Assembly (NCBI RefSeq): GCF_947568905.1 | Contig: NC_079171.1 | Location: forward strand, 74,276,001-74,340,000 | Reading direction: 5' to 3' | DNA from: Ostrea edulis | Taxonomy: Eukaryota | DNA: 64,000 nt | Shown: positions 7,161 through 43,587 of the stretch, piece after piece | How the letters are laid out: each line of letters begins with the position of its first letter | How positions within the stretch are numbered: the stretch's first letter is position 1 | Made by a program: the position numbers and the translations under genes | Notes under the pieces: model-generated | Told to the model about the DNA's origin: nothing | Databases searched by the model: none | The model's input: the letters and a program-made list of their open reading frames with translations, nothing else

Positions 7161-7169
7161 TATTAAGTA

Positions 7170-7208
7170 CATCTTGTGCATCAAAATTTGTACCGTATAA
7201 GGTTTTAC
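7170..7208 (+). mobile_element. Tail fragment of the hammerhead-bearing repeat (no catalytic core)
   Basis: catcttgtgcatcaaaatttgtaccgtataaggtttt matches the sequence 3' of the ribozyme core in the other copies. Confidence 0.7.
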
Positions 7209-10944: not shown

Positions 10945-10988
10945 GCATCACTGAAGAGACATTGTTTGTCGAAATGTGCATCTTGTGC
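10945..10988 (+). ncRNA. Hammerhead ribozyme variant
   Basis: GCATCA CTGAAGA GACattgtttGTC GAAA TGTGCA TC TTGTGC; core intact, one stem I mismatch, imperfect stem III palindrome. Confidence 0.75.
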
Positions 10989-12185: not shown

Positions 12186-12554
12186 ATATATTAATCGAAA
12201 ATGTTGAAATTGAAAGGTATATGTTTTACTGACATGTTTATTTTCCCTTGCAAGATACATTTATTATAAATTGTTTAGAGACACTGTGGGAACTTTGTTC
12301 TGACCCCATTTTCTTCATCTTGTTCATGTGTGTTTTTGAAGAGGTGACAATTTTGTTTCACAAAAAATAAAATATTAAAATGTGCAGAATAGGGTAAGGA
12401 TAGGATGCAGGACACTGGATATAACCCTACACTGCATCAAACATCGTCTGTACTACATCTTGTATTTTGAACTATGTATGTAAATTCAGAACTATTTTAT
12501 ATCTATACGTTTCAGTTTATCGTCGCAGCGAAACACAACTTTATACCAAAGGAT

Positions 12555-14147
12555 GGGTACCTGTAAAGTGCGAAAGGAAATATAAACGAAACGAAACGAA
12601 GTCTACCGAAACGAACTATACCGAAACGAGACGAAACCCACCCAAACGAAACGAAACCCACCGAAACAAAACGAAATATTATGTAAGCGAACTCTTTTAA
12701 TTATAATGATTAGAATTTGTATCTTAGGCCTCTGTGAAAGTTACCACATATAACTAAAATTCACCTCCCCTTGAAACGAAACCTACCGAAACAAAGCGAA
12801 ATATTGTATAAGCGAACTCTTTTAATTATAATGATTAGAACTTGTATCTTGGGCCTCTGTGAAAGTTACCACACATAAATAAAATTCGCCTCCCCATTGA
12901 TTTAGGCTTTCGGCTTGACTGATACAAAGTTTTAAAAGTTGGAAAGGAGGGGAGGGGGTGAGTAAGCACAAAGTACATATCCGAAGTTGATAAAATACCA
13001 TGTGCAATTAGTTTCGGGTCCATGCATTTCAGAATGGAGGGTCACAGTCCCAAAGGTTTTGAGAAATACATTAATTGAGGGGCGGGGTCGCTGGCGTTGG
13101 ATCCGCATTTAGTCATAGATGCATTGCTTGAAGAAGGTGGTGTCTGAGAAATTTGAAAGCAAGAAAAGTTTCAAACCTCTTATATTATAACAACAGGGGA
13201 TGCTTACTCTTCCTAGGCACCTGATCCCACCTCTGGTGTGTCCAGGGGTCCGTGTTTGCCCAACTATCTATTTTGTACTGCTTGTAGGAGTTATGAGATT
13301 GATCACTGTTCGTTATCTTCACCTTGCATCTAACTGCTAAGGTGCGAGTACTTTCAATGATGGAAAACATTGAATAGTATACCATATTATAGGAATGCAA
13401 TTATTCGAAATTAATATTGATATATAGTGAGTCTAAAGATAATTCCATACATTTGGGGTGTTGCTAAGGCGGGAAATTGACAATGGGACGGAAAACGGAT
13501 TAGTTTTATGCAATGCTATCAGGAGGAGGTGACTGAGATCAGCATTTTGTAAAATCAAAAGGTTTATGGACAAGGGAAGCAGCACTTACTAAGAGAACGG
13601 GGGTGGGGGTCATACTCAGAATCAATACTACCTACAAATACACAATATCCACATGTATACATAAATTTGTCTTTAGAGCAAAATATACTGAAACATGTAT
13701 GTATGCCCAAAGGCGGGTTCAACGCCGACGACCCCGCCCCTCCTTTAGTGTGTTTCCCCAGACCTCTGACCTGTGAGATTGTATTTCTCCGTTCTGAAAT
13801 TGATGGATCGGAAACTAATTGCACATGGTATTTAATCAACTTAATATATGTAATTTGAGCTATTTCACCCCCCCCCCTTCCGACTTTTAAAACTTTGTAT
13901 CAGTCAAGCCGAAAGCCTACATCAAAGGGAATGCGAATTTTCGTTATATGTGGCAACTCTCACAAAGGCTTAATATACCATTTTAGATTATAATAATTAA
14001 AATAATTCAGTTATACAATGTTTTCTTTTGTTATGATAGGTTTCGTTTCCTTTAGGTGGGTTTCGTTTCGTTTCGGTATATTTCGTTTTGTTTCGGTATA
14101 TTTCATTTCTTTTTGTTTCGATTTGGTTTCGCACTTTATAGGTACCC
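12555..14147. mobile_element. Foldback/MITE-like element with long imperfect inverted arms
   Basis: Termini gggtacct(g/a)taaagtgcgaaa at 12555 and its reverse complement ending at 14147. aacgaaac/gtttcgtt subterminal repeats; arms 12820-13030 and 13770-14030 are inverted copies. No clear TSD. Confidence 0.8.
13190..13329 (+). mobile_element. Penelope-like element 3'-end fragment nested in the foldback element
   Basis: caacaggggatgcttactcttcctaggcacctgatcccacc...tcgttatcttcaccttgcat. Confidence 0.9.
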
Positions 14148-15460
14148 ACTAAGGGATAGCCATCAGTAGATTTGTAAGATAATCCAAAGGAACAAGAATG
14201 TGGAGAAGTGCATAGTTACTGTCATTTGCAAATCACACCCAGAACGAGCTATATCTGGTGCAACTGATATTGTATCAACGGAATGTAAAGATCTCTGCAA
14301 CATGCTTCTGGTTCTGTTTGACGGGAAAAATCAGATGACGGCATATTTAGTTTCACAAGTTGTATGACGAGGTACACATAAAGCCACCAAATACATAAAA
14401 GATTATATCTTCTACAATCAGTGATTTTACAGTAATATCAGAACAAAAGAAAGCCCTGTATTTCATGCATTCAGTGGCAATCCTTTAACAAAGCAGACAT
14501 GTTGAGATGTCCTCACTACACTGCCAGATCGGGATAATCTTTACACTTGGAGGATGTAAAAGAGGTACATTATATCATATCAGAATTATGATAACACAAA
14601 CTTTTAAAACAAATAACTTTTCGCTTTTAATTTACATTCATGTAGGTACAAGGACAGACAAATACATATCTATTTTAAGGAGTTATATTTATGTTCTTCC
14701 AGAAATCTTGTCATGGGATTAATATGTAACTGAACCCTGCTATCTTAATCTATTTTTAGGATATTAAGATACTTTCAAAAATTGGTCTTTGTACATCTGA
14801 GCGATGCGTTCAGTTTAACCTATCATCCTGGATTGATATCCTTGATTTGGGAACCCTAGATATAAAATGGGATGGATTGAAGACAAGCCTGTGAAATATT
14901 AAATTATAGGTGATGATTAGGACAACAACATTCTTCCATCGTACAGAACGACTCACAATAAGATGATTTCTTTGCATCTCTTTAATGCTATAGTGATGGT
15001 GAATAAAATCACACCACTGATACATCTAGATGACAATTACGTAAATTTAGAATCAGATGACTCCATATCATCAACACAAGAGCAATAATTACATTCATAG
15101 GAACTTGTATTGGTTGTGTAAACATCTTTAATCAGTAACTTGGATGAACTGCAGGAAGTGTTTGAAGCACTATATCCCAAACACTTACAGCACAAGTACA
15201 GTAATTAAGCTGGAGATAAAACAAGGAACCAATAGTTTACTTTTTTGTACTGAATTTGTATGAGCTTAAATGTTATTATATACAGCCAATAGTGCCGCAT
15301 AAAAAAATATTTACAAATTTACACGTTTCTTTACATGGAATTTTTGAACATCATGTGGATATTTCACATTAATTTAACATATCATGTTTTTGGCACTTTA
15401 GTTTTCCTTTAAGCTCTTACAAATTTATTGTCTTTTCAAATTTAGAACATTTCGGCTTGA

Positions 15461-15504
15461 ACATAACTGAAGAAACATTATTTGTCGAAATGCGCATCTG
15501 GTGC
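15461..15504 (+). ncRNA. Hammerhead ribozyme, degenerate stems
   Basis: acataa CTGAAGA aacattatttgtc GAAA tgcgca TC tggtgc; core intact, stem I and the stem II closing pair mutated. Confidence 0.65.
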
Positions 15505-15813
15505 ATCAAAATTGATACGTCATGAGTTTTGCATAACGACCCCTGGATCGAGGCCTCTGCTGGTGGACTGTTAGTCCCCGAGGGTGTCTACAACCAAGTA
15601 GCTAAATATGTCGTTACTTACTTGAAAATACGGATGCATATTTAATTACTGGGGTAACATTTAGAAATTCATTTCAAAATTAAGGATTACATGTGTATAT
15701 TTTATGCATAGCTCTTATCCTTGTACGAATTTGGCTCCAGTTTTTGTCACTTTAGATTTCATTTTAGCTCTTACTTTTTATTTTCATTTCACATTTCGAA
15801 CATGTCGGCTTGA

Positions 15814-15857
15814 GTATCACTGAAGAGACATTTTTTGTCGAAATGCGCATCCCGTGC
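15814..15857 (+). ncRNA. Hammerhead ribozyme, degenerate stem I
   Basis: gtatca CTGAAGA gacattttttgtc GAAA tgcgca TC ccgtgc. Confidence 0.68.
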
Positions 15858-16959
15858 ATCAAAATTGGTACCGTATACGTTTTACATTGATATTTGTTGG
15901 TACCGTCATGTGAATACCAAGCTGTGTTGCCTGTTTCCCATTTTGTACTTGCATTATCATTATCACTGTTTAAATTATGTTGTACATTCTTTCAGTTTAC
16001 TATTGGGATATTTGATTGTAGCAAGACAAAAACTGCAGAAGTCATCAGAATCTTGAAATACCTGCCTGAGAGATGTGTTTCAGTACAGGACGGACAAATG
16101 GTGGAGGAGGTTTTTTTTATTGAGGTATGTGCTTCTGAACCAGTGATTGACCAACGTTGGTGGGATCAAAACCAGTGGCGAATCCAGAGCGGGTTGTTAA
16201 ATCCGTGTGTAAATATACAAGGAGGAACAAACCAAAACATTATATCGGACGAATACCTAGAGCTGCTCAATAGGGAAATTAAAGACATTGCAGAGAGAAA
16301 TCAAACGAAATAACGCATAATGTCCCACTCAAAGCAATATCCACATTTAATTAAGTATGTAAAATATTTTGACATTATCTCAGAGCTGAAAGCAGGAAAG
16401 GGTTTATATAAATTGCCTGAATACAAGGCTGATATTCACAAGGTAGCCAGAGCTCATAGAAATTGAAGCTTTGAGAAAAAATCTAATCGGAAACTGCACA
16501 CAGCTTTCCACAGACAGAAATCCATTTCTGAATTGTTGCCAAGGGTTGTCAACAATGATTCGGAGATATAAACCGATGCTACCATATGGACGTTTATGTA
16601 ATACACGATTCTAGTTATAAATAAATATGAAAGCCACACATGTTTTTTGTTTGTTTGATGCTTTATATGGTATTGGTTTCCCTGTTTTTGGTAACATATA
16701 CCCTGTTTCCAAATGGGTGTGCAACAAAATATTCCTCTTTTAATTAAAAAAGGTATGCAAAATTTTCTCAATAAATATCATAACTTTATGTTCTTAAATG
16801 ATTTTGAAAAGGGTAGTAAGTGCTAATATTTATGTAAGTAAAAGCAAAATAACAATACTTGTGTTGCATAAGGGCATTTATATACAAAATAAAAGTAAAC
16901 TGGTGATTTGTAATAAACGTACAGAAGATTTTAAATTAAATACAAAAATTTATATTGGC

Positions 16960-25994: not shown

Positions 25995-27166
25995 ACCATA
26001 TTTAAAAGTGTTTGTTTCTCCTCTCCCGACCCTAAATTTCAGAGGAGAGTTGGTAGGTTGGTAAAAGGTTTTTTTTAGCCAGCAGAATTGTATTTAGTAT
26101 GAAATCCCAATGTCCATTAACAAAGCCCGATACCAAAACGTCATGAAACACATCATTCCACGTTTCATCGTCAAACTCGTAAAGTCGATCCTTGCGTAAG
26201 GTTCCGCTTTGATTGCCACGTTTAGTAGTTAGAGGAAGGTGTTGATACTTCGGACAGTACTCCAGGTAATTGAGAAATATTCATTATCTAACCACTGAAC
26301 ATAGACATATTGTACATGTATAACGGTTGATTCTACGAACACTCAGGTTTCATCGGATTTGTTCTGCTATTTATGCCACATATGAACACTTAAATGAAGT
26401 CAGTTAGAATGGTGTAACTATGGACAATGATGTTATTTCCGACGCATGGTGTTATAACTTCAGACAGTTAGTAAGTTCGGTTGCTGCTTATTTTGTGGTT
26501 CAGTGACATTGTATGCTTTTGTTTTTGCACATTATGTTAATTCAAGTATGGTAGTGATTTCGAATTTGTTTAGAATTGTTTTATAGTAGGCTTATCGGTA
26601 GATCTAACTTTTACCAGAGAACGTTTCAGCAAGACTTGATTTTGCCGATCAAACAAAATTGATGCTGACATATTTTACAAGGTCAGGTATTTAAATCAAA
26701 CAATCAGATCTGGGTTACACATGCGCATATAATTATGTGTTTTCCAGTTTGTAAATGTATCAAGTTCGGAAATAAGTTTGAATTGAGAATACATGGATAT
26801 AATACTTATTGACTGTTGAAAATATCACACCCGTCCAAAATATCAACACTCCCCCTACTGAAAAACACAGCTTGCACACCCGTATACCCCGAAGTCTCTT
26901 GTCTCTTCGTTCATCTTGTAGAGAACAATTTATCGATCTCAATCTAGCAGATCACCTCTATTCCTATTCTTTTTAGATCGAAACAAAGGAAGATATAGAA
27001 AATACTGGTCATTATAAAATATTGATCTGTACCTGAAACAACCCTGAAATCCATGGATAAAAAAAAAACTTCACCAGAATGACGGAATTAAAACGTTTGG
27101 GTCGGTGCGACTTTCTAAGACTCGGTCGGGCAAAGGGAAACAAACACTATTTTTATTTTGGCCCGA
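25995..27166. mobile_element. Possible MITE with imperfect terminal inverted repeats
   Basis: Left agtgtttgtttctcctctcccgacc versus the reverse complement of the right end (ggtcgggcaaagggaaacaaacact), agtgtttgtttccctttgcccgacc. Confidence 0.45.
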
Positions 27167-27988
27167 AATAGAACACTTGCAATTCTAATTGTTTGTGAAC
27201 AGTCAGAGGTATTTCCACTTTGTGTTGGTTTTTGGTGACCTTTTACCTTAATCAATTATTGAATGTAAACAAAACTTATGAATAAAAGAAAAGAGAACAA
27301 TTTAGAGTTAATTTGGGTATGACTAGTCAGTGGATGTTGTATAGTTTCATTTGGCAATATGAATTAGGTTAAAATTACAAGTATCAAATGGCGGATAATG
27401 CAAGCATTAGCTATCATGGAATTCAAATAGATTCAATGCTGTTTATTTCTGTATTGATTTATGATGGTAGTTATTCTTCATTGATAAAGTGCCTTATGTA
27501 GAATTAAAACTGGTGAATATGAAATGTGGGGGAGTTTTGATTTCCTTGCATGCGATTCTACTTTCAATTAAAAAAATAGTACAGGATGCTGCAGATTTGT
27601 TTGTTGGCTTAGTTGAGTCTGTTTATGTATTCGGTGTCATTCATTGAGTTGACTATGATTTTAAAAGAGGATGTGCAAAATCTGACAGGCAGTGTGTTCA
27701 GGATGACAATTGTGTACAATTTGCATACATTGAACATTGGTAAATGGTGTGTCTGTCTGTGTTTCATGTACTGTTGTAGGCAGCTGTTTTAAATCCTGGG
27801 TAAGCTTAACTGTGGTAAATGCATAGAGGAAAAGAACGAACTGTCTAGGAGAATATGAAATGATATCAAGAACTTGTTTCTCAATTCTATACAAGAAAAT
27901 AACAATTTAAGGACTAAACGTTTAGGTTAGTGATGTTAGTAACTTAGACAATATGAAGGGAGAAGTGTATATTTGTTAAGTTCTATAT

Positions 27989-30900
27989 TAGCCCAGCAGA
28001 TTATGTCTATATATGGAAAAATCTTTCAGTTGGTGATGCAAGCGTCAAACTTGGTACATATATTAACCAAACATAGTTGAATAAATAAAGCACGTTAGCC
28101 ACCCGAAAAAAACAATATGGCGGCCATTTTTCAAGATGGCGGCGGCCTACATTAAGATATTGCATATTCCTTCCTCTATTGTTTGTTAAAAGTGACATTG
28201 TGTTTTTTATTTTCGGAATTCGTGCTTTTTTTGTCTTCCAAACATGATGAGAGACATTTGTGAATCGTTACATAATGAAATGCCGGCCATTTTTTTCAAA
28301 ATGGCGCCAAAGCATTATGTAAGTGTTCAGTACCCAATAATTTGTTTTGTGCTATTGTTTTTAATTGAGTAAAACACCGCTTATTCATTATTGAAGGAGT
28401 ATTTTATACGGTTTTAATCTTCAAGAGATATTTATTTAAAAGAGTGACAGTCGAAGCAGAACCAGGGCACTCTGCTGACGTCACTGCTGTGGAACTCAGC
28501 ATGTGGTCCAACATTAGCTTTACTATTAAGTATTCTTTTATAAAGGTAGTAAATAGTATTAGTAAGATAGCCGCACCTGAATAGACAGGATGTGCCAGCG
28601 CAGGGGAGCCGAGCCAAGGGTAATGGAACAATTGTTACCTGAATGGAGTACATATCTTACGGGTCTTAAACAATGCTGGATGAACGATCGGGCTAGATGT
28701 AGGGGTAAATTTACCATGAACCTAGTTGAATCCCATATTTCAATGTGCTTTGGATAATTTAAGGTGGTAAAAGGATATGCCCTCGGCCTTAAACATTGTC
28801 AGTTTCTATATTATAAAACGTCAATATATACGCTGATACATCTATGACCTTTTGTTTGAAAAATGGCAAATGTGAGACCATTGTCATCAAACTTGGAGAC
28901 AGACTGGAGTAAATGTTGTCTCTATCAGATTGATAAAGATGAGGATCTTAAATCTCCTTCAACCCGTTACGAAACGGACAGATAATGATGGGTTCGTTAT
29001 GATTGCAAGACATATTCCTATCTTCCATGCGATTCATCAGATGCCAATCAAACTAAACCCGAATCGGTTAGATCAAGGTGGTGGAATAGAGGAAACACTA
29101 AGGGAAAACAATACTAAATATCATCAAAGCTGTAGACTTTCATTTAGCAATAATAAGCTTGAAAGGACACGCAAACGATCTGCTACAAATATGTCTGATG
29201 ATGCCCATAGTGTACCTACAAAAAGTAGACGGAGCTCTCTTGAAGATAAAGTATGTTTCTTGTGTGAAAAAGATGCTCCAAAATCTTAATTTCGTCATGC
29301 TATGACGATGGTAAATATCATCGATTAAATGAATGTGCCAGAAATTTGAATAACGTTAGATTGATGACCAGATTAAGTGGTGGGGATATAGTTGCTCAAG
29401 AACTAAAATATCATCGCTCTTGTCTCACAACCTTTTACAACAGGGAGATAGCTCGTTTTGCAAGTCAAAGTAGTGCGGAAAAATGGCAACAAGAGAGAAG
29501 GAGGCCCATCCTATCGTCTTTTCAGTGCTTCTTGTCTACATTGTTGAGTCGAAAATAGGTACTGACGGTCCGATGGTTTTTCGCTTGGCTGACCTTGTGA
29601 GCCTCTATAATCAAGGTTTGATACAATCGGGAGTAGAAGCGCCACGTATAAAATCCACGAGACTTAAAGACAAGTTGTAGGAAGAGATCTCTGGACTAGA
29701 AGCTCACAAAAAAGGTAGGGATATGTTATTAGCCTACAAGGAAGACGTCGGCGAAGCATTATCACAGGCGATGTACTATTCGGAGGCACTGATATTAGCG
29801 AACGCAGCAAAGATATTGCGTAAACGTATACTGGAACAGAAAATGCCTTTCAAGGATCTTTCCATGACAGTTGTATTGAAGATTCAATGCCATCTCTTTT
29901 TGTACAGTTTGTTTGCATGATTGAGCATGGTGCTGATATAAAATCTCAGCTAAGATTTGGTGCTTCGAAAACGGACTTAGCAATGGCACAGCTACTTCAG
30001 TACAACTGTTACGCAAAATACAAAGACGAGTCAAAACCTTTCAGGCGTTCTAAAGACCGTGAGACGTCATTTCCTGTATTTATCGGTATGTCAACTTATT
30101 CAAAAACCAGGAAAAGGATATTAGATGAAATGTTTCATGATCGCGGTCTTAGCGTCTCTTATGATAGGGTGCTTGAAATATCTGCTCAACTAAGGGATGC
30201 AGCGGTCTCCCAATTCTATACGGAAGGTGTTGTTTGTCCATCAAATCTTAGAAAGAATATTTTCACTACTGCTGCTATGGATAATATTAACCACAATCCA
30301 TCTTCAACGTCTGCATCAACATAATTTCATGGAATTAGTATATCCATCTTTCAGCATCTAACATCGGATTACAAAGGTGAGGTGCGGGAGAAATTACCAG
30401 TAAATTCGAAATCTAAAATGGTTCCAGAACTACCGGACTCATTTACCAACATACAATCAGTTTTTTTCTCTGACAAACACCCTAAGCCTTCGAGAGTTGA
30501 TAGTCCTGTTTCAGTTCCAAGTTTACAGCTTCAGCCAGAATATGAATGGTTACAAAAGGTCAGTCTCATTGAATCCGTAAACGAGCATGAAATCAATGTA
30601 ACATGGTTATCACATTTTGCATATTAAGGTAGAAGCCCACCTTTTGAAGTTAGTATAACATCTTTGTTACCATTACTCCGGGACCAAGCACACTCAGTTG
30701 CAACAATCAGACATGTAATGGATAAAATTAGTGATATTGTTGCTATTTTGAATCCTGTTCAGGTCCCAGTGATTGCTGCTGATCAGCCTATCTATGCAAC
30801 AGCCAAATAAATTCAATGACACAGGCCAGAACGTTATGGTGAAGACAAGTTTATCATGATGTTTGGAGGGTTGCATATTGAGATGTCAGCTTTTAAATCA

Positions 30901-31538
30901 AGCCATTCACTCTTGCAGGATAGTGGTTGGACTGGTGCTCTTGTAGAGTCTGGGGTAACAACGCCTGGTACAGCTGAATCATTTTTATCTGCTTCCAGTG
31001 TTACTCGAACACGCCAAATATAACAGGTAACATCATGCTGTTTATATAAACTTATAATAAATGAGGCCTATGAAAATTATAGCAGAGGGAAATGAGAGCA
31101 GTCTTTCCAAAGAAGACTGGGTGAAGAAACGTGAAGCGGAAAGTCCACAGTTTCAGTTTTGGAATTTGATCCTTTGTATGGAGTTGGCTATATTTTTGCT
31201 GATTCGTTCTTTTCGAGAGGCAGACTGTTTGCTTTATCTACAGTCTCTGCAAGGAGAGTAAGGTCTAATTGTATATAGTATATTTAGTACTGCCTGTTTG
31301 TAGTTTTGGTGTCCAGTTGTACGCATTTTTACATCAAATGTGCGATTTTCAGTTGCACCTTCAGTATTTCCAATTCACGAATACGGTATGGCCGCCATCT
31401 TGAAAAATTATGGCCGCGATTTCTAGATATTTGGTGGCTAACGTGCTTTTTTGATAAAATAGTGTCAAAGGATGTTTCATACCAAAGTGCATGCTTGCAT
31501 CACCTACTGAAAGATTGTTAGGGTTATCTGCTTAGCTA
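27989..31538 (+). mobile_element. AcademX-type DNA transposon, internally deleted
   Basis: TAG...CTA termini. Imperfect TIRs tagc(cc/ta)agcagat..aatctttcagt.ggtgatgcaagc and ggccgccatcttgaaaaa. 3-bp TSD TAT (27986-27988 and 31539-31541). Confidence 0.88.
28863..31260 (+). pseudogene. Academ transposase, frameshifted and C-terminally truncated
   Basis: MANVRPLSSNLETDWSKCCLYQ..; LSGGDIVAQELKYHRSCL; TAAMDNINHNPSSTSAST*FHGISISIFQH; PVIAADQPIYA; YGEDKFIMMFGGLHIEMS; covers the track ORFs 28930-31261. Confidence 0.87.
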
Positions 31539-32217
31539 TATATATACATAACTTTTCATGCACACCAATAGTTTCTCTTGGACTCAGAACTTCTTTTGTA
31601 TACATTATGAATAAAATCTACCCTCACAATTTGGCCCACATAGTTTCATCAAACCCCTGCAAGAAGACGGGGAAATGAGATATTTGTTATTAGAATGTGC
31701 ATTGTGTAAAAAATGTTGATATACAGATCAAGATATATTACAAATAATTGGGATGCTATTATGAAGGTTACCTATTTGTATGTGTTACTAAAAAATAAAT
31801 CATATATATTTAAGAATATATATGAATTACAGATACATTAATATATCAAACTTAAAGATCTCTCAAAAGTGGTAGAATGAAGTTTTATGAAAATTCACCA
31901 AAATACAATCCATAATACAAGTTTTATGAATATTCAAATAAATGATTATATTAAAACAGAGATTGAAATTTGTCAAAATGAGGAAAATACATAAATCATG
32001 TTGGTTTCAGATATTTTGGTGTACTAACGTATTTTTTTTTTTTACCTTGACTGAGGTTGAGGCTCAACAAAGGCTTAGATTAATATTAATAACGTTTAAT
32101 ATTTGTCTTATTGTCAATTTTTTTTCCAGATTTTATCTTTTTAATTAATTAAAGAATTAGATCTGTAAATTGTGAGGGAAAAGATATTGTCGATATATTT
32201 CGACAAAAAATATCTAT

Positions 32218-32457
32218 TATGTATATAATAACATTTATGGCGAAACTTTTTCCTTATATTATTTATATTAGTTAGTACCGGGTAACCCGTATTGTACCTC
32301 TGAACATTAAACCCCGTCGGGAACCCCTATTCAACATTAGCACAGTTTGTATCTGAACCAATGAAAACTTGTGAATAGATCACGTGTCTACTTCTGTTAG
32401 AAAGTTTTGATTGTTTGGACTTGTAGAAAGCGTGTTGAAATTTGAGAAATCCAGTAA
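32218..32457 (+). repeat. Split direct repeat A1 (240 bp)
   Basis: One substitution versus A2 (cttgtgaatag / cttgtgtatag). Confidence 0.95.
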
Positions 32458-32608
32458 TTTTTATAGTTTGTGCATTGGAGATTTGCACTAAGTGTAAGTG
32501 ACTTGCAGTTTTGTTTTGTTAACTAGTACATGTTAACATCCTCGTGGGTTGAATCATTGGTACAGTAACTTTGTGCACTCGTTCAGCAGACGCGTCGCGT
32601 CAGTGACG

Positions 32609-33205
32609 ATGGCGGATTAAACGTGCAAGGCGATAGTGATAGGACATTCATATGTGCGCCGTTTGGATGTTTATTTGCAACGTCACAACATAATGAACTT
32701 ACGTTTGGACAACGAACAATTCCAAGTTTCATTACGGGGAAAGGGAGGTTTATGTCTTAGACATATTCGTTTCAATGCAAAAATTCTGCACTTTGACACA
32801 ACCCCCGATATATGTTTCATGCAGATCGGTGAAAATGACATATCGCCCCGTAGCGAACCAGGGAAAATCTCAGAGAACATTTTTTCGCAGACTTGTTATC
32901 TGTGCGACGGAGTTGGCGTAAAAAAAGTTATCGTTTGCCAGTTGTTGCGTCGGCTGCCATATGCGTCCTGTCCACGGTTTAACGAGATGGTACAGTCAGT
33001 GAACCACTTGCTGAAAGAAAAGTTATCGGACGTACAAGGGATTGTGTTTTGGCCACACCGTGGATTCTGGGAGTCACTGTCATACATTTGCCCAGATGGA
33101 GTACACCTGCTATGTACTCAAGCCAATGATCAGCCCATGAGGAAGTTTCTGTGGAGTATAAGCAACGCTATAATTATTAACGCCAAAGATCTCAGGTCAA
33201 TATAA
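32609..33205 (+). pseudogene. SGNH/GDSL hydrolase ORF of the YR element (single nonsense codon at codon 4)
   Basis: ATG GCG GAT TAA ACG TGC AAG GCG ATA GTG ATA GGA CAT TCA is in frame with the 189-aa ORF. Blocks GHS (I), GKGG (II), GEND (III) and DGVH (V) are all present. Confidence 0.88.
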
Positions 33206-33344
33206 ACACATCAAAAATTAAATGCAAACTTGAGTTATTTTAGGCCTTGCCTATGTAGGCCATGGTTGTTATTGGTGTTTGAAACACTTTAAAAAAGCAT
33301 TCTTCAATATCTTCAAAGAAACATTGGGTATAATGTTTATTTAA

Positions 33345-33830
33345 ATAATTACAAAGAAGCAGTCGGTATACTGTTTCATTATTATTAGCACCATTCAGTA
33401 TAATGTTTACATATTACCAAGAAGCATTCACTATAATGTTTCATTATTGCAAGAAAACATTCAGTATAATGTTTTCAGAATTACCAAGAAGCATTCAGTA
33501 TAAGGTTTACATAATTATCAGGAAGCATTCAATATAATGTTTCATTATTGCAAGGAAACATTCAGTATAATGTTTACATAATTACCAAGAAGCATTCAGT
33601 ATAATGTTTCATTAGTGCAAGGAAACATTCAGTATAATGTTTACATAATTACCAAGAAGCATTCAGTATAATGTTTGCATAATTACCAGGAAGCATTCAG
33701 TATAATGGTTCATTATTGCAAGGAAACATTCAGTATAATGTTTACATACTTACCCAGACACATTCAGTATAATGTTTACATAATTACCAGGAAGCATTCA
33801 GTATAATGTGTCATTATTGCACGGAAACAT
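33345..33830. repeat. Internal tandem array of ~33-34-bp units (about 14), two alternating variants
   Basis: Core (a/g)cattcagtataatgttt followed by acataattacca(a/g)g or cattattgcaagg. Confidence 0.95.
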
Positions 33831-34424
33831 TTAGAGTGTGGTTGCAGAGTTATATAGATATAAACTATATATCTGTCTATATTTTAAAGTAGCAGCAGGG
33901 CAGAGTGCAAGGCCTGTGCTATAGAGATATATAAAATGCAATGTCTATTACACTGAGAGGCATTTTAGTATGATATTCCATTGTTATCAATCAACATGAG
34001 TATGATTTAAAATTAGGGAAAGGTTAACGGTATGACGCTACTATTACTACATATTTCCCTGACACCTATTTATGGTACTATATTTATATTCTTTGATAAC
34101 TAAAAACAGCCTCCAGATTTGACATTTAGTTTCTTTCTATCAAGTTATATTATATTATCTATATATTATTGTGCCTAGATATGTTTTTTGGGTTATTGAA
34201 TTTCTGTCAAATTCAGTTATCATAGCCCTTGTTGCGATGTACAAGTCCATTTTATTATACATGCGAACTGTTTATATCTATGCTGGATGTCATGTGGTAT
34301 ACTGTTTGGTGTTTACAGTAGTATTAGTTTGCCAACTGTCTCACTCATCAAGTTTGTTGGAAGTTGACATGCCCCTTTTTCCTTGATGCCCAGATTTACT
34401 GTTGTTAATTATGTTTTAGCAAAC

Positions 34425-35439
34425 ATGCCAAAGGGCAAAGCCACTTCAAGGAAGCGACCAGCTTCACCCCGGCCCGCTCCAAAGAAGTCCAGTCGTCACA
34501 GTGTAGCACCACACAACCCGTCTGTGGAACAAGAGCCTGCATAGTTGACCCCCACCATAGATTATGAAAAACTGGCGAGACACATCGTCCAGGAGCAAGC
34601 ACGGGCCCAAAATGCAAACGTTCCCCCAGAACAGACGTCTCCCAATTCACGGCACCAAATGGATGGGACTTGCTAGGACATACCAACCACTTCCAACCAA
34701 GCCATTTCGAGTGACAATGTCACCACCATCCTTGACGCAGTATTTCAGGGTGAGTCGGCACGCAATCCCACACCCATTGCAATCAGTGATAACATACCCT
34801 TAGGGCTACAGTCCCTATGAAAACCAAGTGCAAAATCTGGGCCAATGAATTTATTGACCTCAGAACACTACTGCCCAATTATACAGATGATCCCCTTTCA
34901 ATCACCATACAGGCAGGGAAAATTGATGTAGAGCAGAGCCAAAAACAAAAGTACCCGCTCTCCATCAACCAGTGGATTGATGCTTTTATAACATTTATGT
35001 CGATATACCTTCAGAGATATCCAGCGGAGGCATGCAATATCCTAAAGTACTGTGCATACATCAGGGAGATTAACAGATTGCATGTTGACGAGGCATGGCG
35101 GGGATATGATGAAACTTTTCGCAAGTTAAGAGAATCCTCCTTACTTCCATGGCAGCAGCCAGTACCGGAACTGAGGTTGCGGGTTGCTGCCATGGGACCA
35201 AAATTCTCAGATAAGTCCCATCCCCCATATGCTAAGAAGTCTAATTTTCGTCCCCAAAAGGTGTGTTTCGCCTACAACGGGGGTGATAAATGTTCAGTCT
35301 TCCCATGTAAATATGTCCATGTGTGTCAGAGTGTGGCAATAGACATCCCAGAACAAAGTGTTTTGCTAAACCCAAGCCCCAGCCACACCAACCATCCCGT
35401 ACCTCTTCCAATCCCAGTAAAACCAGCAATACTACGTAA
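34425..35439 (+). pseudogene. gag-like ORF with C-terminal Cys/His fingers
   Basis: MPKGKATSRKRPASPR..(stops)..KIWANEFIDLRTLL..LSINQWIDAFITFMSIY..YDETFRKLR..CFAYNGGDKCSVFPCKYVHVC; after a 1-nt shift, CGNRHPRTKC..SNTT*. The track ORF 34817-35542 fuses gag to the pol N-terminus through this indel. Confidence 0.8.
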
Positions 35440-37910
35440 GGAGCTACTAGGTTATGATTCAAATAAATCACAATACTTAGTTGAGGGATTTTGTAGAGGG
35501 TTTAGGTTAGGTTGTGTAGGCGCACCCTCGCAGTTGTGTTAAGTAGGGTCATATAAATATGTCAGGAAAAAAGCGTCAATAAACAGATCAATTTGTGACA
35601 AATTCTGTAAACACAGCCCTTTTATACAAAAACAATATGTATATATCATTAAGTGCATATTGACCTCTTATACATTTTTCACCAGACCGACAGTCTCTAC
35701 ATCAACTCTGTATCACGTGATCAATCATCAAGATAAAAACGTATCGTGTATGTATAAATCGTTAAATTGGCACGATATCCAGATATCAATACAATTTGAA
35801 GTTAATATAACTTCAAAGCATATTAATTTCTTAATTTGAAAAGTGCTGAGAGCAAGTTTATTGTGACTTGTAACATGTCTAATTTTTGTATTGAATATGC
35901 AAGATGCAGCGATTTTTAGACATACGAAGTTGAATCTAGCCTGAAAAACATATTTTCTGTTGAAGCCAGAACTTGGTCCCCTAACTTTCCTCTGGCACTG
36001 AAGTTCACATGTCACATAAATCAAACATCTTTCACTTAAAAACCTCGGGGTGTCGTGCCAATAATGAAATTGTTATGTACGGAAACCCGGTTTATGCAAA
36101 TGAGTCCATTGTGAAAGTAACTATACGTGTAGATTAGGGGCGATATCAAGATCACAATATAATATGGATATTACTTTAGCATGCATGCTATATAAAGAAG
36201 AAATTGAAACGTTTTCAATATCAAAGAGAATTAATATAACCCATTTGACAGAAACTTTTACGCGATTGCAGTTTACCATTTGACAGAGGTGGTAAATAAC
36301 GAAAGAATATTTTGACATTTCCAACCACAAAAGGACTGTAGATATGTACGTCATGACCTTCGTCGTGACGTATTTTTCATTGTGACGTCGTGCAATATGC
36401 CAGTGCGGTAAAGTATATTTATGTACAGCACTGGTATTAAACAATTTATGGGGAAAGCCTTAACTCAACCGCGCTTGGGATCTTCACCACAGAATCATAA
36501 GTCAACTAGGGACCATGTGGAGGCCATTAATGAGTACATATTGAAAGAAATACAAGCACAACGAATAGCAGGCCCCTTTGATGATCCGCCTTTAACAAAT
36601 TTTGCTACATCACCATTAGGCATTGTTCCCAAATCAGAAGTAGGTAAATATAGAGTAATTCATGACTTATCATTCCCCGAAGGTCAGTCAGTTAATACAT
36701 ACATTCCTCGTGAAAATTCCAAAGTTCAATATGATACAATAGACAAAGTTATTTCACTAGTACAATATTTTGGGCGGGGGGCTTTTATGGCAAAATCTGA
36801 CATTAAGGATGCTTTCCGCATAGTGCCCATACATCCATCAGACTATCATCTTCTTGGGTTTACCTGGAAAAGTAAATATTATTATGACCGCTGCCTCCCT
36901 ATGGGAGCCAGTAGCTCATGCAAAATATTTGAGGAGTTTAGTCAGGCTCTGGTTTGGATCATGCTCAACAAATATCATGCATCGGGGATATCCCATATCC
37001 TTGATGATTTCTTTTTCATTTCATCCAGTGTCGAAAAATGTCGGGAGGACTTATCACGGTTCCTTTTTTGTGTAACCAGGTTAATATACCTATCAATATG
37101 GCCAAAACTTTTGCCCCTACAACACAGTTAATTATATATGGCATCGAAGTTGATTCTCTCGTCATGGAATGTAGGTTGCCCAGGAGAAAATTATAAAAAT
37201 TAGCAGCAAGCTCAGTGATTTCTGTCATCGGAAGAATGCACACCTATGTGAATTACAATCCCTTATAGGCTTGTTAAATTTTGCTTGTACCTGGCACAGG
37301 TAGAGCTTTCTTGCGACGCCTTATCGATTTAACTTGCAATATCTCAAAACCCTTCCATTTTGTTTATCTCACCAAAGAGGCACGTGCTGACCTAAGTATG
37401 TGGTTCCAGTTCATCTCGCACTTCAACGGAAAATCAGTTTCCCTCCCTTAACAATGGGACTCCTCTGATTACAAAAGTATGTACACGGATGCGTCAGGGT
37501 CAATTGGATTTGCGGCAGTGTTGGGATCACACTGGTTTGCGCAGTCTTGGTCGAAAGAACTTGATCATTTCCAGATTGCAATTAAGGAACTCTTTCCCAT
37601 TGTCTTGGCTTTAGAAATATGGGGAGGACAACTACAAAATAGAAGGATTCTTTTTCTAACCGACAACATGTCAATAGTACAAATCATTAACAAACAATCT
37701 AGTAAAGACAAAACTATCATGATACTTATCAAGAGGCTTGTGCTTGCTGGCCTTTACAACAATATTCACTTCAAAGCCAAACATATTAGGGGAAAATTGA
37801 ATGTAATTGCAGACAAGCTATTTCGTTTTCAATTCCAGGCAGCTCGGCAGCTAGCACCGGATCTGGAGGAATGTCAGATACTCATCCCACACTCTCTTCT
37901 ACACATTTAG
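35390..37910 (+). pseudogene. Reverse transcriptase-RNase H (DIRS/Ngaro type), interrupted by an insertion and frameshifts
   Basis: LPIPVK..LVEGFCRGFRLG | NHKS..RIAGPF..SPLGIVPKSEVGKYRVIHDLSFP..KSDIKDAFR..LPMGASSSC..HILDDF; RNase H YTDASG..IAIKELFPI..TDN..NVIADKL. Confidence 0.93.
35531..36471. mobile_element. 941-bp TIR element inserted in pol
   Basis: Left cagttgtgttaag..ataaat versus right-end reverse complement cggttgagttaag..ataaat (same offset). Possible CG TSD (35529-35530 and 36472-36473). The RT sequence resumes on the far side. Confidence 0.72.
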
Positions 37911-38814
37911 CACATGGGGCACGGACACTTTTATCAGCATCCTTGGCATTATCAACTCAATTAGCGTACCGGCGATCATGGCAACTCTTGCAAACATTTC
38001 AAGGTCAGAGAGCTTTACCCTTGCGTGTGGTTGACATATCCAACTTTATACCCCACTTGCATGCATCCCATTTTAGTGCAAGTACAGTTTCTTCCCATTT
38101 TTCTGCCATAGGCTATGTACATAAGATACTTGCATTACCGGACCCTACACAGCTGTTTATTGTGAAAAAGATACTAAGGGGTTATCACAGGTTGTCTCCC
38201 ACAGTGGATTCACGCCTGCCAATTGCCAGAGATATCTTGCTTCAGATTATCAAGGCTATACCCCACACCATTTCTGTTTTGGATTATCGTATTATGTTAG
38301 AAGCCCCTTTCTCTATTTGTTTTCATTCTTTCCTTAGATTGGTGAGGTCACAGTAAAACAAGGCATTACATCAGATAAAGTCATTCACCTTCAAGATGTA
38401 GAGTTTCAATACAATGACTCCATTCCCTCCAGAGTGCAATTAGTATTGCGCTATTTCAAAACCCAAAAAATGAATAAGCCTGTCACAATTTGTGTAGAGG
38501 GCTCCCCCACACTGGACCATTGCCCCGTCAAATCATTACACCGTTATCTGTCGCATTCAGGTCATACATCTGGTCCACTTTTTCAATATAGAGATGGTTC
38601 TCCGATTACGTACAATTATGTTTCCAAAGAACTTTCAAACATCATTAAGTATGTTAGTCTCAATCCTGCACTATACAAAGGTCACAGTTTTCGCATTGGG
38701 GCAGCAACATATGCAGCACAAAAAGGGTACTCGGAGAATTATATCCAACAATTAGGTCGCTGGAACTCTAATGCCTTGAAACGCTATATTCGCATACCTA
38801 CACTTTCTCTTTGA
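37871..38814 (+). pseudogene. Tyrosine recombinase, one frameshift near 38340
   Basis: SLALSTQLAYRRSW..DSRLPI..FHSFLR-(I)GEVT..YFKTQK..CPVKSL..GPLF..YKGHSFRIGAAT..LGRWNSNALKRYIR; catalytic R, H-x-x-R, W and Y visible. Confidence 0.93.
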
Positions 38815-38984
38815 TCACTTCACCTCTCCTGAATCAGCCCATTCGTTGGTGAAGTTCAAATATTTTATGCAGGTCCGTGTTTAACTGCTGCATCAAGTTG
38901 TTGGCTCATTTCACTCATTGGCTGTACCCGGTTTCTTTCTATACAGGCCCATTTTCCACCATATATAACTTTTACCAAAAATGC

Positions 38985-39245
38985 CAGTGTCCTACTACCC
39001 AAAAAATGGGGTTTACCATGCACGTCAGTGTTTAAGTGTCGCAATTATGAGGTCATTATGCAGGTCAGTGTTTAACCGCTGCAACAACGGGGGTTACCAT
39101 GCAGGTCAGTGTTTAACTGCTGCAACAATGGGGTCACAATGCAGGTCAGTGTTTAACTGCTGCAACAATGGGGTCACCATGCAGGTCAATGTTTAACTGC
39201 TGTAACAACGGGGACTACCATGCAGGTCAGTGTTTAACTGCTGTG
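38985..39245. repeat. Internal tandem array, ~38-bp unit, about 6 copies, downstream of YR
   Basis: ccatgcaggtcagtgtttaactgctgcaacaa(t/c)gggg(t/g)(c/t)a repeated. Confidence 0.93.
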
Positions 39246-39477
39246 GAAAAAACCCCAATCCATTTCCCTTCCCACTTTAAAGTACCTGTTTTAGGCATAT
39301 TTGCGTGCTGACTCACCAACAGGGTCCAACCGAAATATCCATTAATTACCTCCGTTATGGTTGAATTGTAGTTAAGTTTTTCACAACTTATGTATATAAA
39401 TGTTTGAATTTGTTACACAATTTACAAGACAGCTCACCTTGGATGGCTCTGAATATGATTTGTTAATCATATCTTTG

Positions 39478-39918
39478 GCCCTTTTTGTTCGCCATCTTTT
39501 TGCTTGTTGTACACTTTGGAACAAGTTTCCAAGGTCTGTATTTTAACTAGTCATTGTTTGTTATTTGTGATAATCATGTATGGGGAAAATCAGGACAGAT
39601 GTGTTGAAATCCTATGTAATTACATTGTATGTATCTACTGATTTTCCCCTGGTTGAACTGGTCAGTACCATATTTATCTGTGAAATTATCTATATGGGAG
39701 AAATCAGAAATGATGGGTTTATATATTGTGCAAGATTATGACAGTGTTTGTGGATCGCTGATGTCCCCCCTTCTTTGTATTAACCTTTATCTTCGTCATT
39801 TGTTGTCTAAAATAAATGACATATTTCATTCTCATACAGTTTTACAGTGTTGATTTTTAAAGCAAAAACAAGCTTTGGTGAGCTGTCCTCTTGAAAAGGA
39901 AATAGTATGAGACATAAA
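39478..39918 (+). repeat. Split direct repeat B1 (441 bp)
   Basis: Matches B2 apart from 10 substitutions and a 44-bp inversion. Confidence 0.95.
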
Positions 39919-39926
39919 ATATATAG

Positions 39927-40166
39927 TATGTATATAATAACATTTATGGCGAAACTTTTTCCTTATATTATTTATATTAGTTAGTACCGGGTAACCCGTA
40001 TTGTACCTCTGAACATTAAACCCCGTCGGGAACCCCTATTCAACATTAGCACAGTTTGTATCTGAACCAATGAAAACTTGTGTATAGATCACGTGTCTAC
40101 TTCTGTTAGAAAGTTTTGATTGTTTGGACTTGTAGAAAGCGTGTTGAAATTTGAGAAATCCAGTAA
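39927..40166 (+). repeat. Split direct repeat A2
   Basis: Near-identical to A1. Confidence 0.95.
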
Positions 40167-40239
40167 CCCACCACCTCCCCATCTTAAATCCCACCTATAT
40201 ATATAAAAATGTAGCTTAATTATTCGTCATCTTATTGTA

Positions 40240-40680
40240 GCCCTTTTTGTTCGCCATCTGTTTGCTTGTTGTACACTTTGGAACAAGTTTCCAAGGTCTG
40301 TATTTTAACTAGTCATTGTTTGTTATTTGTGATAATCATGTATGGGGAAAATCAGTAGATACATACAATGTAATTACATAGGATTTCAACACATCTGTCC
40401 TGATTTTCCCCTGGTTGAACTGGTCTGTACCATATTTATTTGTGAAATTATCTATATGGGGGGAATCAGAAATGATGGGTTGATATATTGTGCAAGATTA
40501 TGACAGTGTTCGTGGATCGCTGATGTCCCCCCTTCTTTGTATAAACCTTTATCTTCGTCATTTGTTGTCTAAAATAAATGACATATTTCATTCTCATACA
40601 GTTTTACAGTGTTGATTTTTAAAGCAAAAACAAGCTTAGGTGAGCTATCCTCTTGAAAAGGAAATAGTATGAGACATAAA
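40240..40680 (+). repeat. Split direct repeat B2
   Basis: Matches B1; separated from A2 by a 73-bp spacer with a C-rich tract. Confidence 0.95.
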
Positions 40681-42664
40681 TAGATATCATGATATATTGG
40701 GTTTTAACGTTTGCTGGTTTCTTTATAATTTATTTTGTTTTATTTTGAGGAAAGAAAATGTAGATTTCATTTTTTTTTAAACGTAAGATTAAAGCAAAAT
40801 TAAAGATTTTGACTTTTTTTCTTTATAATTGCTAGAAAAAGAAAATTGACTTTTCTTTTGAATGTTTGATGAATCCTATCATATACTTTTTTTGCAAATA
40901 CCTTAATTTCTGAACATTATATGCTTCCAGAAAGTGTTAAAAAAAATCGATACTTTAGTAAATGTACATGTGCATTGATGTATCAAATTGAACCCCTCTG
41001 CATCACAAAATATCAACGTATTGTTACACCCTCATTGAGAACCACTGAGCCAATTTCAATCAAACTTGGAACAGTAAAGGTGGTCCTATGAAAGAGACTT
41101 TTTAACAGGATGGGTGTCCTACAAAATCTATCAGAACTACAATTTGTGATATTACTATACAAGCATCCTGAAATGTATAGGGGTACAGTAGGAAACTTGT
41201 CAAGTTTTTTAAAAGGAAAAATTAAAGCAAAACATGTGCATGTGTGAAGTAATGTCTTTCAGTAACAATACAGAGGTTTTGAAATGGACAGAAAGCCTAC
41301 AATGATGCTGAAATGTTTTGGAATCCAAGTAATATAGATACACACTGATATCATCCAGAATGAATCAAGCATCCATCAGTTTTTGAGGATTAGTTGCAAA
41401 GACATGTAAATGATTAAGCATTTTCAACATAATATAGAAAATATACTCAGAATAGATTTCTTATACATATCTATTGTTGGATATTTCCATATGCCAAATC
41501 CATTCTCAATATTCTATCTACATGGGAATGTAATTTGTTCTTTGCTTCAAGCCTCTTCTTTATATACCCTTAACATGTGGATAGTTAATGTTTAATGTTT
41601 GAGATTTTTTGTTACTTAACTTTAGCATGAATGTGTCAAGTTTCCGTAAAAGGAATTAAATAATTTGAATTATAAAAAGAGAACTCTCTATGCGTCTTAA
41701 GGAAGTTTTAAACTCGACAGTTTCAGTCCATTCTAGCTAAAATGTAACTTTTAAAAGACCAATATTGAATGAAAAATTAAATCAGTAACTAAGGTGTAAT
41801 CTTCTCACGATTCGGCGTCTCAACATATCTCGTATCAAGACTATTTGAATATGTATCGGGCCACCATTTTTCCTCTCCTGATCCTATGGAGATGACAAAC
41901 AGAAAATACAATTACTTCACCCTAATTATCGTACTGTGTTGAAATCGTGTAAGGAGTACGTTTATGTTTGAGGGTCTCGTGCATTTTCGAGATACAAATA
42001 TCTGATATGTCCTAGAATTGTGCGGAAACGGATGGAACCATAGCGTACTTTTTTGCATACCAATCAATGAAACTATTGGGAGCTGTTTCTTACAAGTCTC
42101 CTGAAACAGCTAGACAGACTTAGTAGTACAGATAGATACACAGACAGTTTGACAGATATATATTTTATTTTAGTATTTCATATAATTAATTCATAACCTA
42201 ATAAACATCAAATTCATAACGTAATAGATAATAAATTGTTTGAAAAGAGTTTTGGAAGGAATATATCTGTTTTTAAAGAAGTCCCTATACTATCACCACA
42301 AATATACATTCTTGTTGCAGATGACGCAATGCAATGATCACCAGGTTTCTGTTCGTCGTTTTGCACCCACCGCATTTGCCCCTCAAGGTGGAAAAAAAAA
42401 TTGAAAACTAATTGCTCATCTAAAGGGCACCACCACTCATCTCCCAAAAGATGATTTGGCTTTTCATAAAATGAAAACCCCAATTGATCCCAGGGTGAAA
42501 ACGAAAATTTTGAAACTTTATTGCACATTTATAAGACACCGCCAATTATCTTCCAAAAGATTAGTTGGCTAGTAGGTAAAACAGGGAACCAAATGTATGA
42601 AATCTGGGAACTAGGTTTTTTTTTTTTTATAGAAAAACAATTTTTGAACACCATTTTGTTCCCA

Positions 42665-42865
42665 TTAGTACCTCGTTCGCACGACATAATATCTCGTCTG
42701 CACGACTTTTAAATTACCTCGTTCGCACGAGTTAATTATCTCGTTCGCACGACTTATTTTCTCGTTAGAACGACATATTTTCTCGTTCGCACGACATATT
42801 TTCTCGTTCACACGACATATTATGTCGTTTGCACGACATAATATCTCAGGCGAACGACATAATTT
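42665..42865. repeat. Degenerate ~21-22-bp tandem repeat (ctcgttcgcacgacata..), about 9 copies
   Basis: Directly visible. Confidence 0.88.
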
Positions 42866-43587
42866 CCTTATTTTATTTAAAACTTCTATATTTGTGCAGT
42901 CATTTTTATCACTAATCGGAACTGTACATTTCTTTAATATGAAATATCACTTGGACATGTTTTGTTAATCATGAAAAGTCAAATTGAAATAATAATAAAT
43001 ATCGGTATAAATACAAATCAATACTTAAAATATGATGATCGTATGTGCCTCAGCTCTTTGTCTTTCAAGAATGTTGTTTTTCCAACACTGACCCACATAA
43101 GATATCAAATCACTTGGAAATTGTATAACTAGGATGGACTGCTCTAACTTAGCCATAACATCCCGCTGTGTCATTCCATTAATACATTGAAAGTCCAGAT
43201 ATTGCAGCTCTGGGGTGCATTTATTTGTAATGAATGCACGCAACAATTAATATTGTTGAACATGTTTTTTTTGGGAGGGGGGGGGGGTGGACACGTTCAT
43301 ATGCTTTTGGATTTTGTTTGTAACGTTTGGAATTTTTTTTTAATCATTTAATTATTATTTTAAAAAATCATCCTCACTTCTGATTAAAATAATACTGTAA
43401 TTTAATTGACATCATTTAAAAAAGTTTTATGTACAACAAGGAAATTGCTTTTCTTTTTTAGTTTCAAAGAAAATGTTTAACCATTTATTTACAAAAGTAA
43501 CTTAGAGAAAAACGTATTATTTCACATGTTTTAAAAGCATCACGAAACCGTTTTTAAATAATGTTTGAAAGGAAGCTAGATAATCAT

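What the first reader, a model, noticed from the sequence alone, without database searches (positions are those of the whole stretch)
39582..40411. Exact 44-bp inversion between 12-bp inverted repeats distinguishes the two B repeats of a recombinase-encoding retrotransposon
Seen: B1 reads GGGGAAAATCAG (39582-39593), a 44-bp core gacagatg..gtatcta (39594-39637), then CTGATTTTCCCC (39638-39649). B2 has the same arms (40344-40355, 40400-40411), but its core (40356-40399) is the exact reverse complement with zero mismatches. The core contains a 12-bp palindrome, ATGTAATTACAT, and a third degenerate direct copy of the arm (tatgggagaaatcag) lies ~50 bp downstream. Established: split-repeat YR elements are thought to regenerate their repeats through reverse transcription and a circular intermediate, so B1 and B2 should be colinear at insertion. 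Inference: this could be a flip-flop (inverton-like) switch in the element's terminal repeat, driven by its own YR in trans. It could equally be a one-off hairpin-mediated microinversion or RT template switch, which is common at stem-loops. A 12-bp arm with a 44-bp spacer is not a canonical YR core site.
Basis: partly seen in the sequence, partly recalled or inferred. Interest (0 to 1): 0.8.

Follow-up and report, generated by a model that had tools for sequence, protein, structure and literature searches.

The report
One-off hairpin-loop inversion in a retrotransposon repeat
The 44-bp inversion is real, but it happened once in an old, broken Ngaro-type retrotransposon and was copied along with a duplicated chromosome segment, so it is an ordinary inverted-repeat microinversion and not a recombinase-driven switch.

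Summary
B1 (39478-39918) and B2 (40240-40680) are direct repeats. Their 44-bp cores, each between perfect 12-bp inverted arms, are exact reverse complements.

The element (about 32202-40680) is a degenerate Ngaro-type tyrosine-recombinase (YR) retrotransposon. It has the order A1, RT, RNase H, YR, B1, A2, B2, and its YR reading frame is broken.

- **Census.** A whole-genome count finds 63-69 B repeats in the B1 orientation on all ten chromosomes, including about 11 B1/B2 pairs. Only 3 B repeats are inverted.
- **One origin.** The three inverted repeats are the B2 of three paralogous copies of one insertion. These copies sit in a 98-99% identical duplicated segment of at least 36 kb on one chromosome, so they record a single event.
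- **No flipping since.** None of the three paralogs has changed orientation since they diverged.
- **Fourth paralog.** It carries a single B1/B2 chimeric B in the common orientation.
- **Cassette location.** The core sequence occurs nowhere outside B repeats.

The best explanation is a one-off inversion of the spacer between inverted repeats by polymerase template switching, a known mutation class. This scan had not reported the inversion elsewhere. Interest is low.

The parts
32202..40680 (+). Whole Ngaro-type YR retrotransposon copy. The left end is ambiguous within 32202-32208 because target and element share an A-rich core.
   Evidence: A1/A2 and B1/B2 repeats. Empty paralogous sites join 32201 to 40681. 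The right end ...ACATAAA is shared by independent insertions.
32202..32457 (+). A1 repeat
   Evidence: 98% identical to 39911-40166 (D9)
36421..37128 (+). Reverse transcriptase ORF fragment
   Evidence: Pfam RVT_1, E 1.3e-05, 25.5 bits, below the gathering score
37479..37907 (+). RNase H ORF fragment
   Evidence: Pfam RT_RNaseH, E 6e-04
37871..38353 (+). YR N-terminal SAM-like domain fragment, in a different frame from the catalytic part
   Evidence: Pfam Phage_int_SAM_1, E 0.005. The same domain order lies in one ORF in a sister copy.
38434..38811 (+). YR catalytic domain fragment. The open frame is only 158 aa, so the gene is broken between 38354 and 38433.
   Evidence: Pfam Phage_integrase, 27.1 bits, at the gathering score. 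98% identical to a sister copy's 290-aa ORF that scores 28.2 bits.
39478..39918 (+). B1 repeat, cassette in the family's common (F) orientation
39582..39593 (+). B1 left 12-bp arm
39594..39637 (+). B1 44-bp core (ancestral orientation), containing the palindrome at 39615-39626
39638..39649 (-). B1 right 12-bp arm (inverted copy)
39693..39707 (+). Third, degenerate direct copy of the arm motif in B1
39911..40166 (+). A2 repeat. Its first bases overlap the end of B1; this is the B|A junction.
40167..40239 (+). 73-bp segment between A2 and B2, conserved in the family and absent after A1
40240..40680 (+). B2 repeat, cassette core inverted (R orientation)
40344..40355 (+). B2 left 12-bp arm
40356..40399 (-). 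B2 44-bp core, exact reverse complement of 39594-39637 (derived state)
40400..40411 (-). B2 right 12-bp arm
40455..40469 (+). Third, degenerate direct copy of the arm motif in B2

Best explanation
A Ngaro-type YR retrotransposon inserted once into another repeat on chromosome-scale contig C8, with B1 and B2 alike and both in the family's usual orientation. While it sat in the chromosome and decayed, the 44-bp spacer between the perfect 12-bp inverted arms of B2 was inverted in one step. The most likely route is a DNA polymerase that switched to the complementary template at one arm and back at the other. That route leaves the arms untouched and replaces the loop with its exact reverse complement. 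Later a segment of at least 36 kb that carries the element was duplicated several times on C8, so three paralogs now show B1 forward and B2 inverted. A fourth paralog lost A2 and half of each B by B1 x B2 recombination and kept the forward cassette. Shown here: the inversion is exact, it is a single event, it was inherited by DNA-level duplication, and it has been stable since. Inferred: the polymerase template-switch step and its timing after insertion.
For: Exact inversion bounded by the arms, 0 mismatches, no indel. Left-junction census: R 3, F 63. Right-junction census: R 3, F 69. Core census: 68 copies, all inside B repeats, with strand discordant only at the same three places. About 11 elements carry both B1 and B2 in F. 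The three R copies lie at C8 68.62, 73.49 and 74.32 Mb and share upstream and downstream flanks at about 98.3-98.4% identity over a 14.6-kb alignment; the same paralogs match window 7001-16196 at 99%. B2 of the paralogs form one clade (98/91) and B1 form another (100/99). B1 and B2 share a lineage-specific G after the right arm. They carry 4-6 and 3-4 private substitutions that all paralogs share, so the element sat in the chromosome for a long time before the duplication. The 12-bp stem is the dominant predicted fold of either version. Inversion of the spacer or loop between perfect arms of 9 bp or more by template switching is documented (PMC8604942, PMC8794818, PMC5453318).
Against: Documented template-switch spacer inversions are mostly a few bases long, and 44 nt is long for the class (PMC8604942, PMC8794818). 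Nothing in the sequence separates a host-replication event from one made during reverse transcription at insertion, or from reciprocal exchange between the arms. No sequencing reads were available, so rare somatic or population-level flipping is not excluded. Some of the 98-99% paralogs could be uncollapsed haplotypes rather than true duplicates. That would change the bookkeeping but not the single-origin inference.
Confidence: 0.65

Rival explanations
1. Still a single event, but made during the original retrotransposition. The reverse transcriptase or second-strand polymerase switched strands at the hairpin while B2 was copied, so the element landed with B2 already inverted.
For: Reverse transcriptases switch templates readily (established knowledge). 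The cassette folds as a 12-bp stem. The end product would be identical, and all three R copies trace to one insertion.
Against: None of the other 65 or more B repeats, each a product of reverse transcription, is inverted. B1 and B2 each gained several substitutions before the duplication, so a chromosomal event had ample time. Neither point is decisive.
Confidence: 0.25
2. The cassette is an invertible switch. A family YR, acting in trans, flips the core between the 12-bp arms, and this locus was caught with B1 and B2 in opposite states.
For: Perfect inverted arms and a third arm-like motif 44 bp downstream. The cassette is identical in most copies. At least two family copies keep a long open frame across the YR.
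Against: One event among about 68-72 cassettes. It is never seen in B1 or in an independent insertion. Three paralogs about 1.6% diverged all keep the same state. On a B-copy tree with a total length of about 0.44 substitutions per site (my sum of the branch lengths) there is one flip, so the cassette flips about as rarely as a single base mutates. The local YR is broken. The element's recombination site is the B|A junction about 280 bp away, not the cassette. From established knowledge of YR sites: a 12-bp arm cannot hold a full core site, and 44-56 bp is too short for synapsis by looping.
Confidence: 0.03
3. Assembly or polishing artefact at a hairpin.
For: Inverted repeats can trouble some sequencing chemistries (general knowledge).
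Against: The same state is assembled at three loci 0.8-5.7 Mb apart. Each locus has private variants inside or next to the cassette, and the junctions are exact on both sides.
Confidence: 0.02

Closest known systems
Template-switch inversion of an inverted-repeat spacer or hairpin loop (short template-switch mutations; minute hairpin inversions)
   Same: Perfect arms of at least 9-11 bp. The spacer is replaced by its exact reverse complement. The arms and total length are unchanged. It is a single-step event seen as a cluster of differences between close relatives (PMC8604942, PMC8794818, PMC5453318).
   Different: The spacer is 44 nt, longer than the 2-8 nt typical of the published nuclear and rRNA cases. 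It lies in a terminal repeat of a retrotransposon, so the other repeat (B1) preserves the ancestral state beside it.
Ngaro group of tyrosine-recombinase retrotransposons (order DIRS)
   Same: RT, RNase H and YR in that order, with no room for a methyltransferase domain. Split direct repeats A1...B1-A2-B2 with the internal repeats downstream of the YR. Insertion without a conventional target duplication at a site resembling the element's B|A junction (PMC4157794, PMC7192593).
   Different: This copy is degenerate: the domains sit in different frames. A conserved 73-bp segment separates A2 from B2. No hydrolase domain was detected by Pfam in the 5' ORFs tested.
Bacterial invertons and Flp/FRT-type or Cre/lox-type YR inversion switches
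   Same: Inverted repeats flank an invertible segment, and a YR gene belongs to the same element family.
   Different: There is no recurrent flipping. The arms are too short and too close to be full recombination sites. The recombinase gene beside the cassette is broken. The element's real crossover site lies elsewhere.

Membership tests
Ngaro-type YR retrotransposon | Encodes RT, RNase H and a tyrosine recombinase on one strand in that order | tested here: met
   Four colinear Pfam hits on the + strand. Three are below the gathering score in this broken copy. The YR of a 98%-identical sister copy passes it.
Ngaro-type YR retrotransposon | No methyltransferase domain (this separates Ngaro from DIRS1 and PAT) | tested here: met
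   The RNase H fragment ends at 37907 and the YR SAM-like fragment starts at 37871, so no room remains. No such Pfam hit appears in the ten ORFs scanned.
Ngaro-type YR retrotransposon | Split direct repeats A1 ... B1-A2-B2, with the internal repeats downstream of the YR | tested here: met
   A1 32202-32457 matches A2 39911-40166. B1 39478-39918 matches B2 40240-40680. The YR ends at 38811.
Ngaro-type YR retrotransposon | Integration by site-specific recombination at the repeat junction, leaving no staggered-cut target duplication | tested here: inconclusive
   Five empty paralogous sites show the flanks adjacent. The target has an A-rich stretch resembling the B|A junction, and a short A run is shared at both ends. 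Only one insertion could be compared with its empty site.
Recombinase-driven invertible switch (inverton-like) | Both orientations recur among copies or lineages | tested here: not met
   3 R against 63-69 F. All R copies are identical by descent.
Recombinase-driven invertible switch (inverton-like) | Both orientations coexist at one locus in a population of molecules | not testable with these tools
   No reads or other individuals were available. As a proxy, three paralogs all keep B1 forward and B2 inverted.
Recombinase-driven invertible switch (inverton-like) | An intact cognate recombinase | tested here: not met
   The YR of this copy and of its paralogs has an open frame of only 158 aa. 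Supply in trans from other copies is not excluded.
Template-switch spacer inversion | Perfect inverted arms, with the spacer exactly reverse-complemented and arms and length unchanged | tested here: met
   12-bp arms, 44/44 core positions, no indel.
Template-switch spacer inversion | A single mutational event on one branch, with the ancestral state known from relatives | tested here: met
   F is the state of every other family copy. R is confined to one clade of paralogs.

The most novel reading that the evidence does not exclude
The 68-bp cassette, identical in most copies of the family, could be a functional hairpin of this Ngaro lineage. It might act in priming or packaging, or hold protein-binding motifs together with the third arm-like copy. 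Its loop might be flipped at a very low rate by a family YR acting in trans, and this locus would be the only fixed example.
Probability: 0.03. Interest if true: 0.6.

Novelty: already known. Interest (0 to 1): 0.12.

Why it matters
It matters little beyond annotation. The locus is a clean, dated example of a long (44-nt) spacer inversion between short inverted repeats in an animal nuclear genome. The ancestral state is preserved 762 bp away in the sister repeat, and the derived state is replicated in three paralogs. It also cautions that opposite orientations in two repeats of a recombinase-bearing element need not involve the recombinase. The side observations may help people who annotate YR retrotransposons and segmental duplications in this genome. 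These are the empty sites that define the element's ends, a target resembling the B|A junction, and a B1 x B2 recombinant paralog.

Tried and rejected
1. **Gapped census pattern.** Four fixed 31-mers replaced it, plus a core 31-mer.
2. **Mapping the full duplication.** The extent therefore rests on two 20-kb searches. Its downstream limit beyond window 43761 is unknown.
3. **Compensatory changes in the arms.** Decayed copies were checked as a sign of selection on the stem. Five copies with a left-arm A>G were paired with their right arm. Four have an unchanged right arm and one has the matching T>C, so the test is uninformative.
4. **Position-specific B1 and B2 variants.** These would mean the two repeats are inherited separately. 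The tree hinted at this, but the column table shows none outside the C8 paralogs. Rejected.
5. **Independent foldback or MITE.** The cassette could have been a small mobile element inserted into B. Rejected, because all 68 core copies lie inside B repeats.
6. **Organism.** It was not identified.

Full report
**Observation**

B1 and B2 are direct repeats 762 bp apart. Their left parts (39478-39593 and 40240-40355) are 99% identical and their right parts (39638-39918 and 40400-40680) are 97% identical (D6 and D1). Between them, the 68-nt stretches 39582-39649 and 40344-40411 are 100% reverse-complementary (I1).

The outer 12 nt on each side are themselves an inverted repeat, so the arms read the same in both copies. 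Only the 44-nt core is turned, with no mismatch and no length change. The four arm copies are the only exact matches to the 12-mer in the window; 0.24 matches within one mismatch are expected by chance. The palindrome at 39615-39626 and the degenerate third arm-like motif (39693-39707 and 40455-40469) are also present. As single-stranded DNA, either version folds with the 12-bp stem as its dominant feature.

**What the element is**

A1 (32202-32457) matches A2 (39911-40166) at 98% (D9). This gives the layout A1, internal region, B1, A2, a 73-bp segment, B2.

The internal region has four colinear Pfam hits on the + strand:
- reverse transcriptase, 36421-37128
- RNase H, 37479-37907
- the SAM-like N-terminal domain of tyrosine recombinases, 37871-38353
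- the catalytic integrase domain, 38434-38811

These lie in different reading frames, so this copy is degenerate. A sister copy that is 98% identical carries both YR domains in one 290-aa ORF and passes Pfam's gathering score. No space remains for a methyltransferase domain between RNase H and the YR.

**Ends of the element**

The element sits inside another repeat, and other copies of that repeat lack it. In five such empty sites, the sequences that flank the element here (up to 32201 and from 40681) lie next to each other. The target carries an A-rich stretch that resembles the element's own B|A junction. Independent insertions all end in ...ACATAAA followed by unrelated flank. This fits recombinase-mediated insertion of a circle at the B|A junction. 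That junction lies about 280 bp from the cassette.

**Census of orientation**

The window is C8:74276001-74340000 of an 895-Mb assembly. Orientation can only be scored against sequence outside the arms, so I used 31-mers that span outer flank, arm and the start or end of the core, with up to 3 mismatches.

| Probe | Inverted (R) | Common (F) |
|---|---|---|
| Left junction | 3 | 63 |
| Right junction | the same 3 | 69 |

- F hits lie on contigs C1-C10.
- A core-only 31-mer gives 68 hits. All lie at B-repeat positions, and the strand disagrees with the flanks only at those three places. The cassette is therefore not a separate small mobile element.
- About 11 elements have both B1 and B2 present, and both are forward.

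**One event**

The three inverted cassettes are the B2 of elements at C8 68.62, 73.49 and 74.32 Mb. The last is this window. The three elements have the same flanks. Window 27000-41586 aligns end to end with the 68.6-Mb copy at 98.4%, and the 73.5-Mb copy aligns at about 98% in two overlapping pieces. Alignment resumes after a 2.4-kb indel. Window 7001-16196 also matches the same paralogs at 99%, along with a fifth, partial paralog at 75.23 Mb.

They are therefore DNA-level duplicates of one insertion in a segment of at least 36 kb, not separate transpositions. Some may be uncollapsed haplotypes, but the common descent stands either way.

A fourth paralog at 66.42 Mb has a single B. At the sites that differ between B1 and B2 it reads as B1 up to column 304 and as B2 from column 362. 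This is the product of unequal B1 x B2 recombination to the right of the cassette, and it explains why that B is forward.

**Timing**

- In other elements, B1 and B2 are identical at all informative columns.
- In this element both repeats share a lineage-specific G just after the right arm. They were therefore alike at insertion, and the forward state is ancestral.
- Before the duplication, B1 gained 4-6 substitutions and B2 gained 3-4 plus the inversion.
- Since the duplication the paralogs have diverged by about 1.6%, and none has changed orientation.
- On a tree of 38 B copies with a total length of about 0.44 substitutions per site (my sum of the branch lengths printed) there is one inversion. 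The cassette therefore flips about as rarely as any single base mutates. That is many orders of magnitude below a switch.

**Mechanism**

Inversion of the spacer between perfect inverted arms by polymerase template switching is a documented mutation class. The polymerase switches to the complementary template at one arm and back at the other. The arms stay intact and the loop is exactly reverse-complemented (PMC8604942; PMC8794818; PMC5453318). The product here has exactly that form.

At 44 nt, this spacer is longer than most published cases. I cannot tell whether the switch happened during chromosomal replication (my preference, given the long residence before duplication) or during cDNA synthesis at insertion.

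The YR reading is disfavoured for four reasons:
- The inversion is a single event.
- The local YR is broken: the open frame is 158 aa in all four paralogs, against 332-341 aa in two other family copies.
- The crossover site lies elsewhere, at the B|A junction.
- From established knowledge of YR sites, a 12-bp arm cannot hold a full core site, and arms 44 bp apart are too close to synapse.

**Verdict**

Both the element type and the mutation type are already known.

**Not done**

- No reads were available to test heterogeneity at the locus.
- No other species could be searched for this family.
- The organism was not identified.

Noticed in passing
window 7001-43761 and G000:C8 at 66.38-66.42, 68.58-68.62, 73.45-73.49 Mb, partial at 75.23-75.26 Mb: A segment of at least 36 kb is present in four copies, plus one partial copy, at 98-99% identity. 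All lie in the last 11 Mb of the 77-Mb contig C8. Sequence downstream of about window 43800 matches other C8 places at only 91-94%. Some copies could be uncollapsed haplotypes.
   Followed up: partly
G000:C8:66419030-66419470 (L004, L068/L069): The fourth paralog has one chimeric B (B1-like on the left, B2-like on the right) and lacks A2. This is unequal recombination between the two B repeats of the same element.
   Followed up: yes
window 32190-32210 and 40670-40700; L070-L074: Five empty paralogous sites of the host repeat define the insertion point. The target has an A-rich stretch that resembles the element's B|A junction. This suggests recombination at a short shared core rather than a staggered cut.
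   Followed up: partly
window 41586-41591: The other three paralogs carry about 2.4 kb here that the window lacks. This is an insertion in them or a deletion in the window.
   Followed up: no
window 33413-33849 and 38865-39249: There are two tandem arrays inside the element: a 33-34-bp unit repeated about 13 times, and a 40-41-bp unit repeated about 7 times just upstream of B1.
   Followed up: no
window 42667-42866: A 21-bp tandem array outside the element also forms imperfect inverted repeats.
   Followed up: no
Pfam at E<=0.01 gave no hit for this 189-aa ORF or for the other 5' ORFs tested. Only ORF pieces were scanned, so the reading stays open.
   Followed up: partly
G000:C5:56948596, 57024047, 57099494: Three copies of the same family lie exactly 75.45 kb apart and share the same private mismatch in the left flank. 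A tandem duplication on another chromosome therefore also carries this family.
   Followed up: no
window 39811-39816 and 40573-40578; window 39931-39940: Each B repeat holds an AATAAA motif, and each A repeat begins with a TATATAA-like motif. This fits A acting as promoter and B as terminator of the element's transcript. It is inference only.
   Followed up: no
whole genome: More than 150 places encode YR catalytic domains 38-61% identical to this one, many with open frames of 320-366 aa. The genome therefore holds many distinct YR-element families.
   Followed up: no
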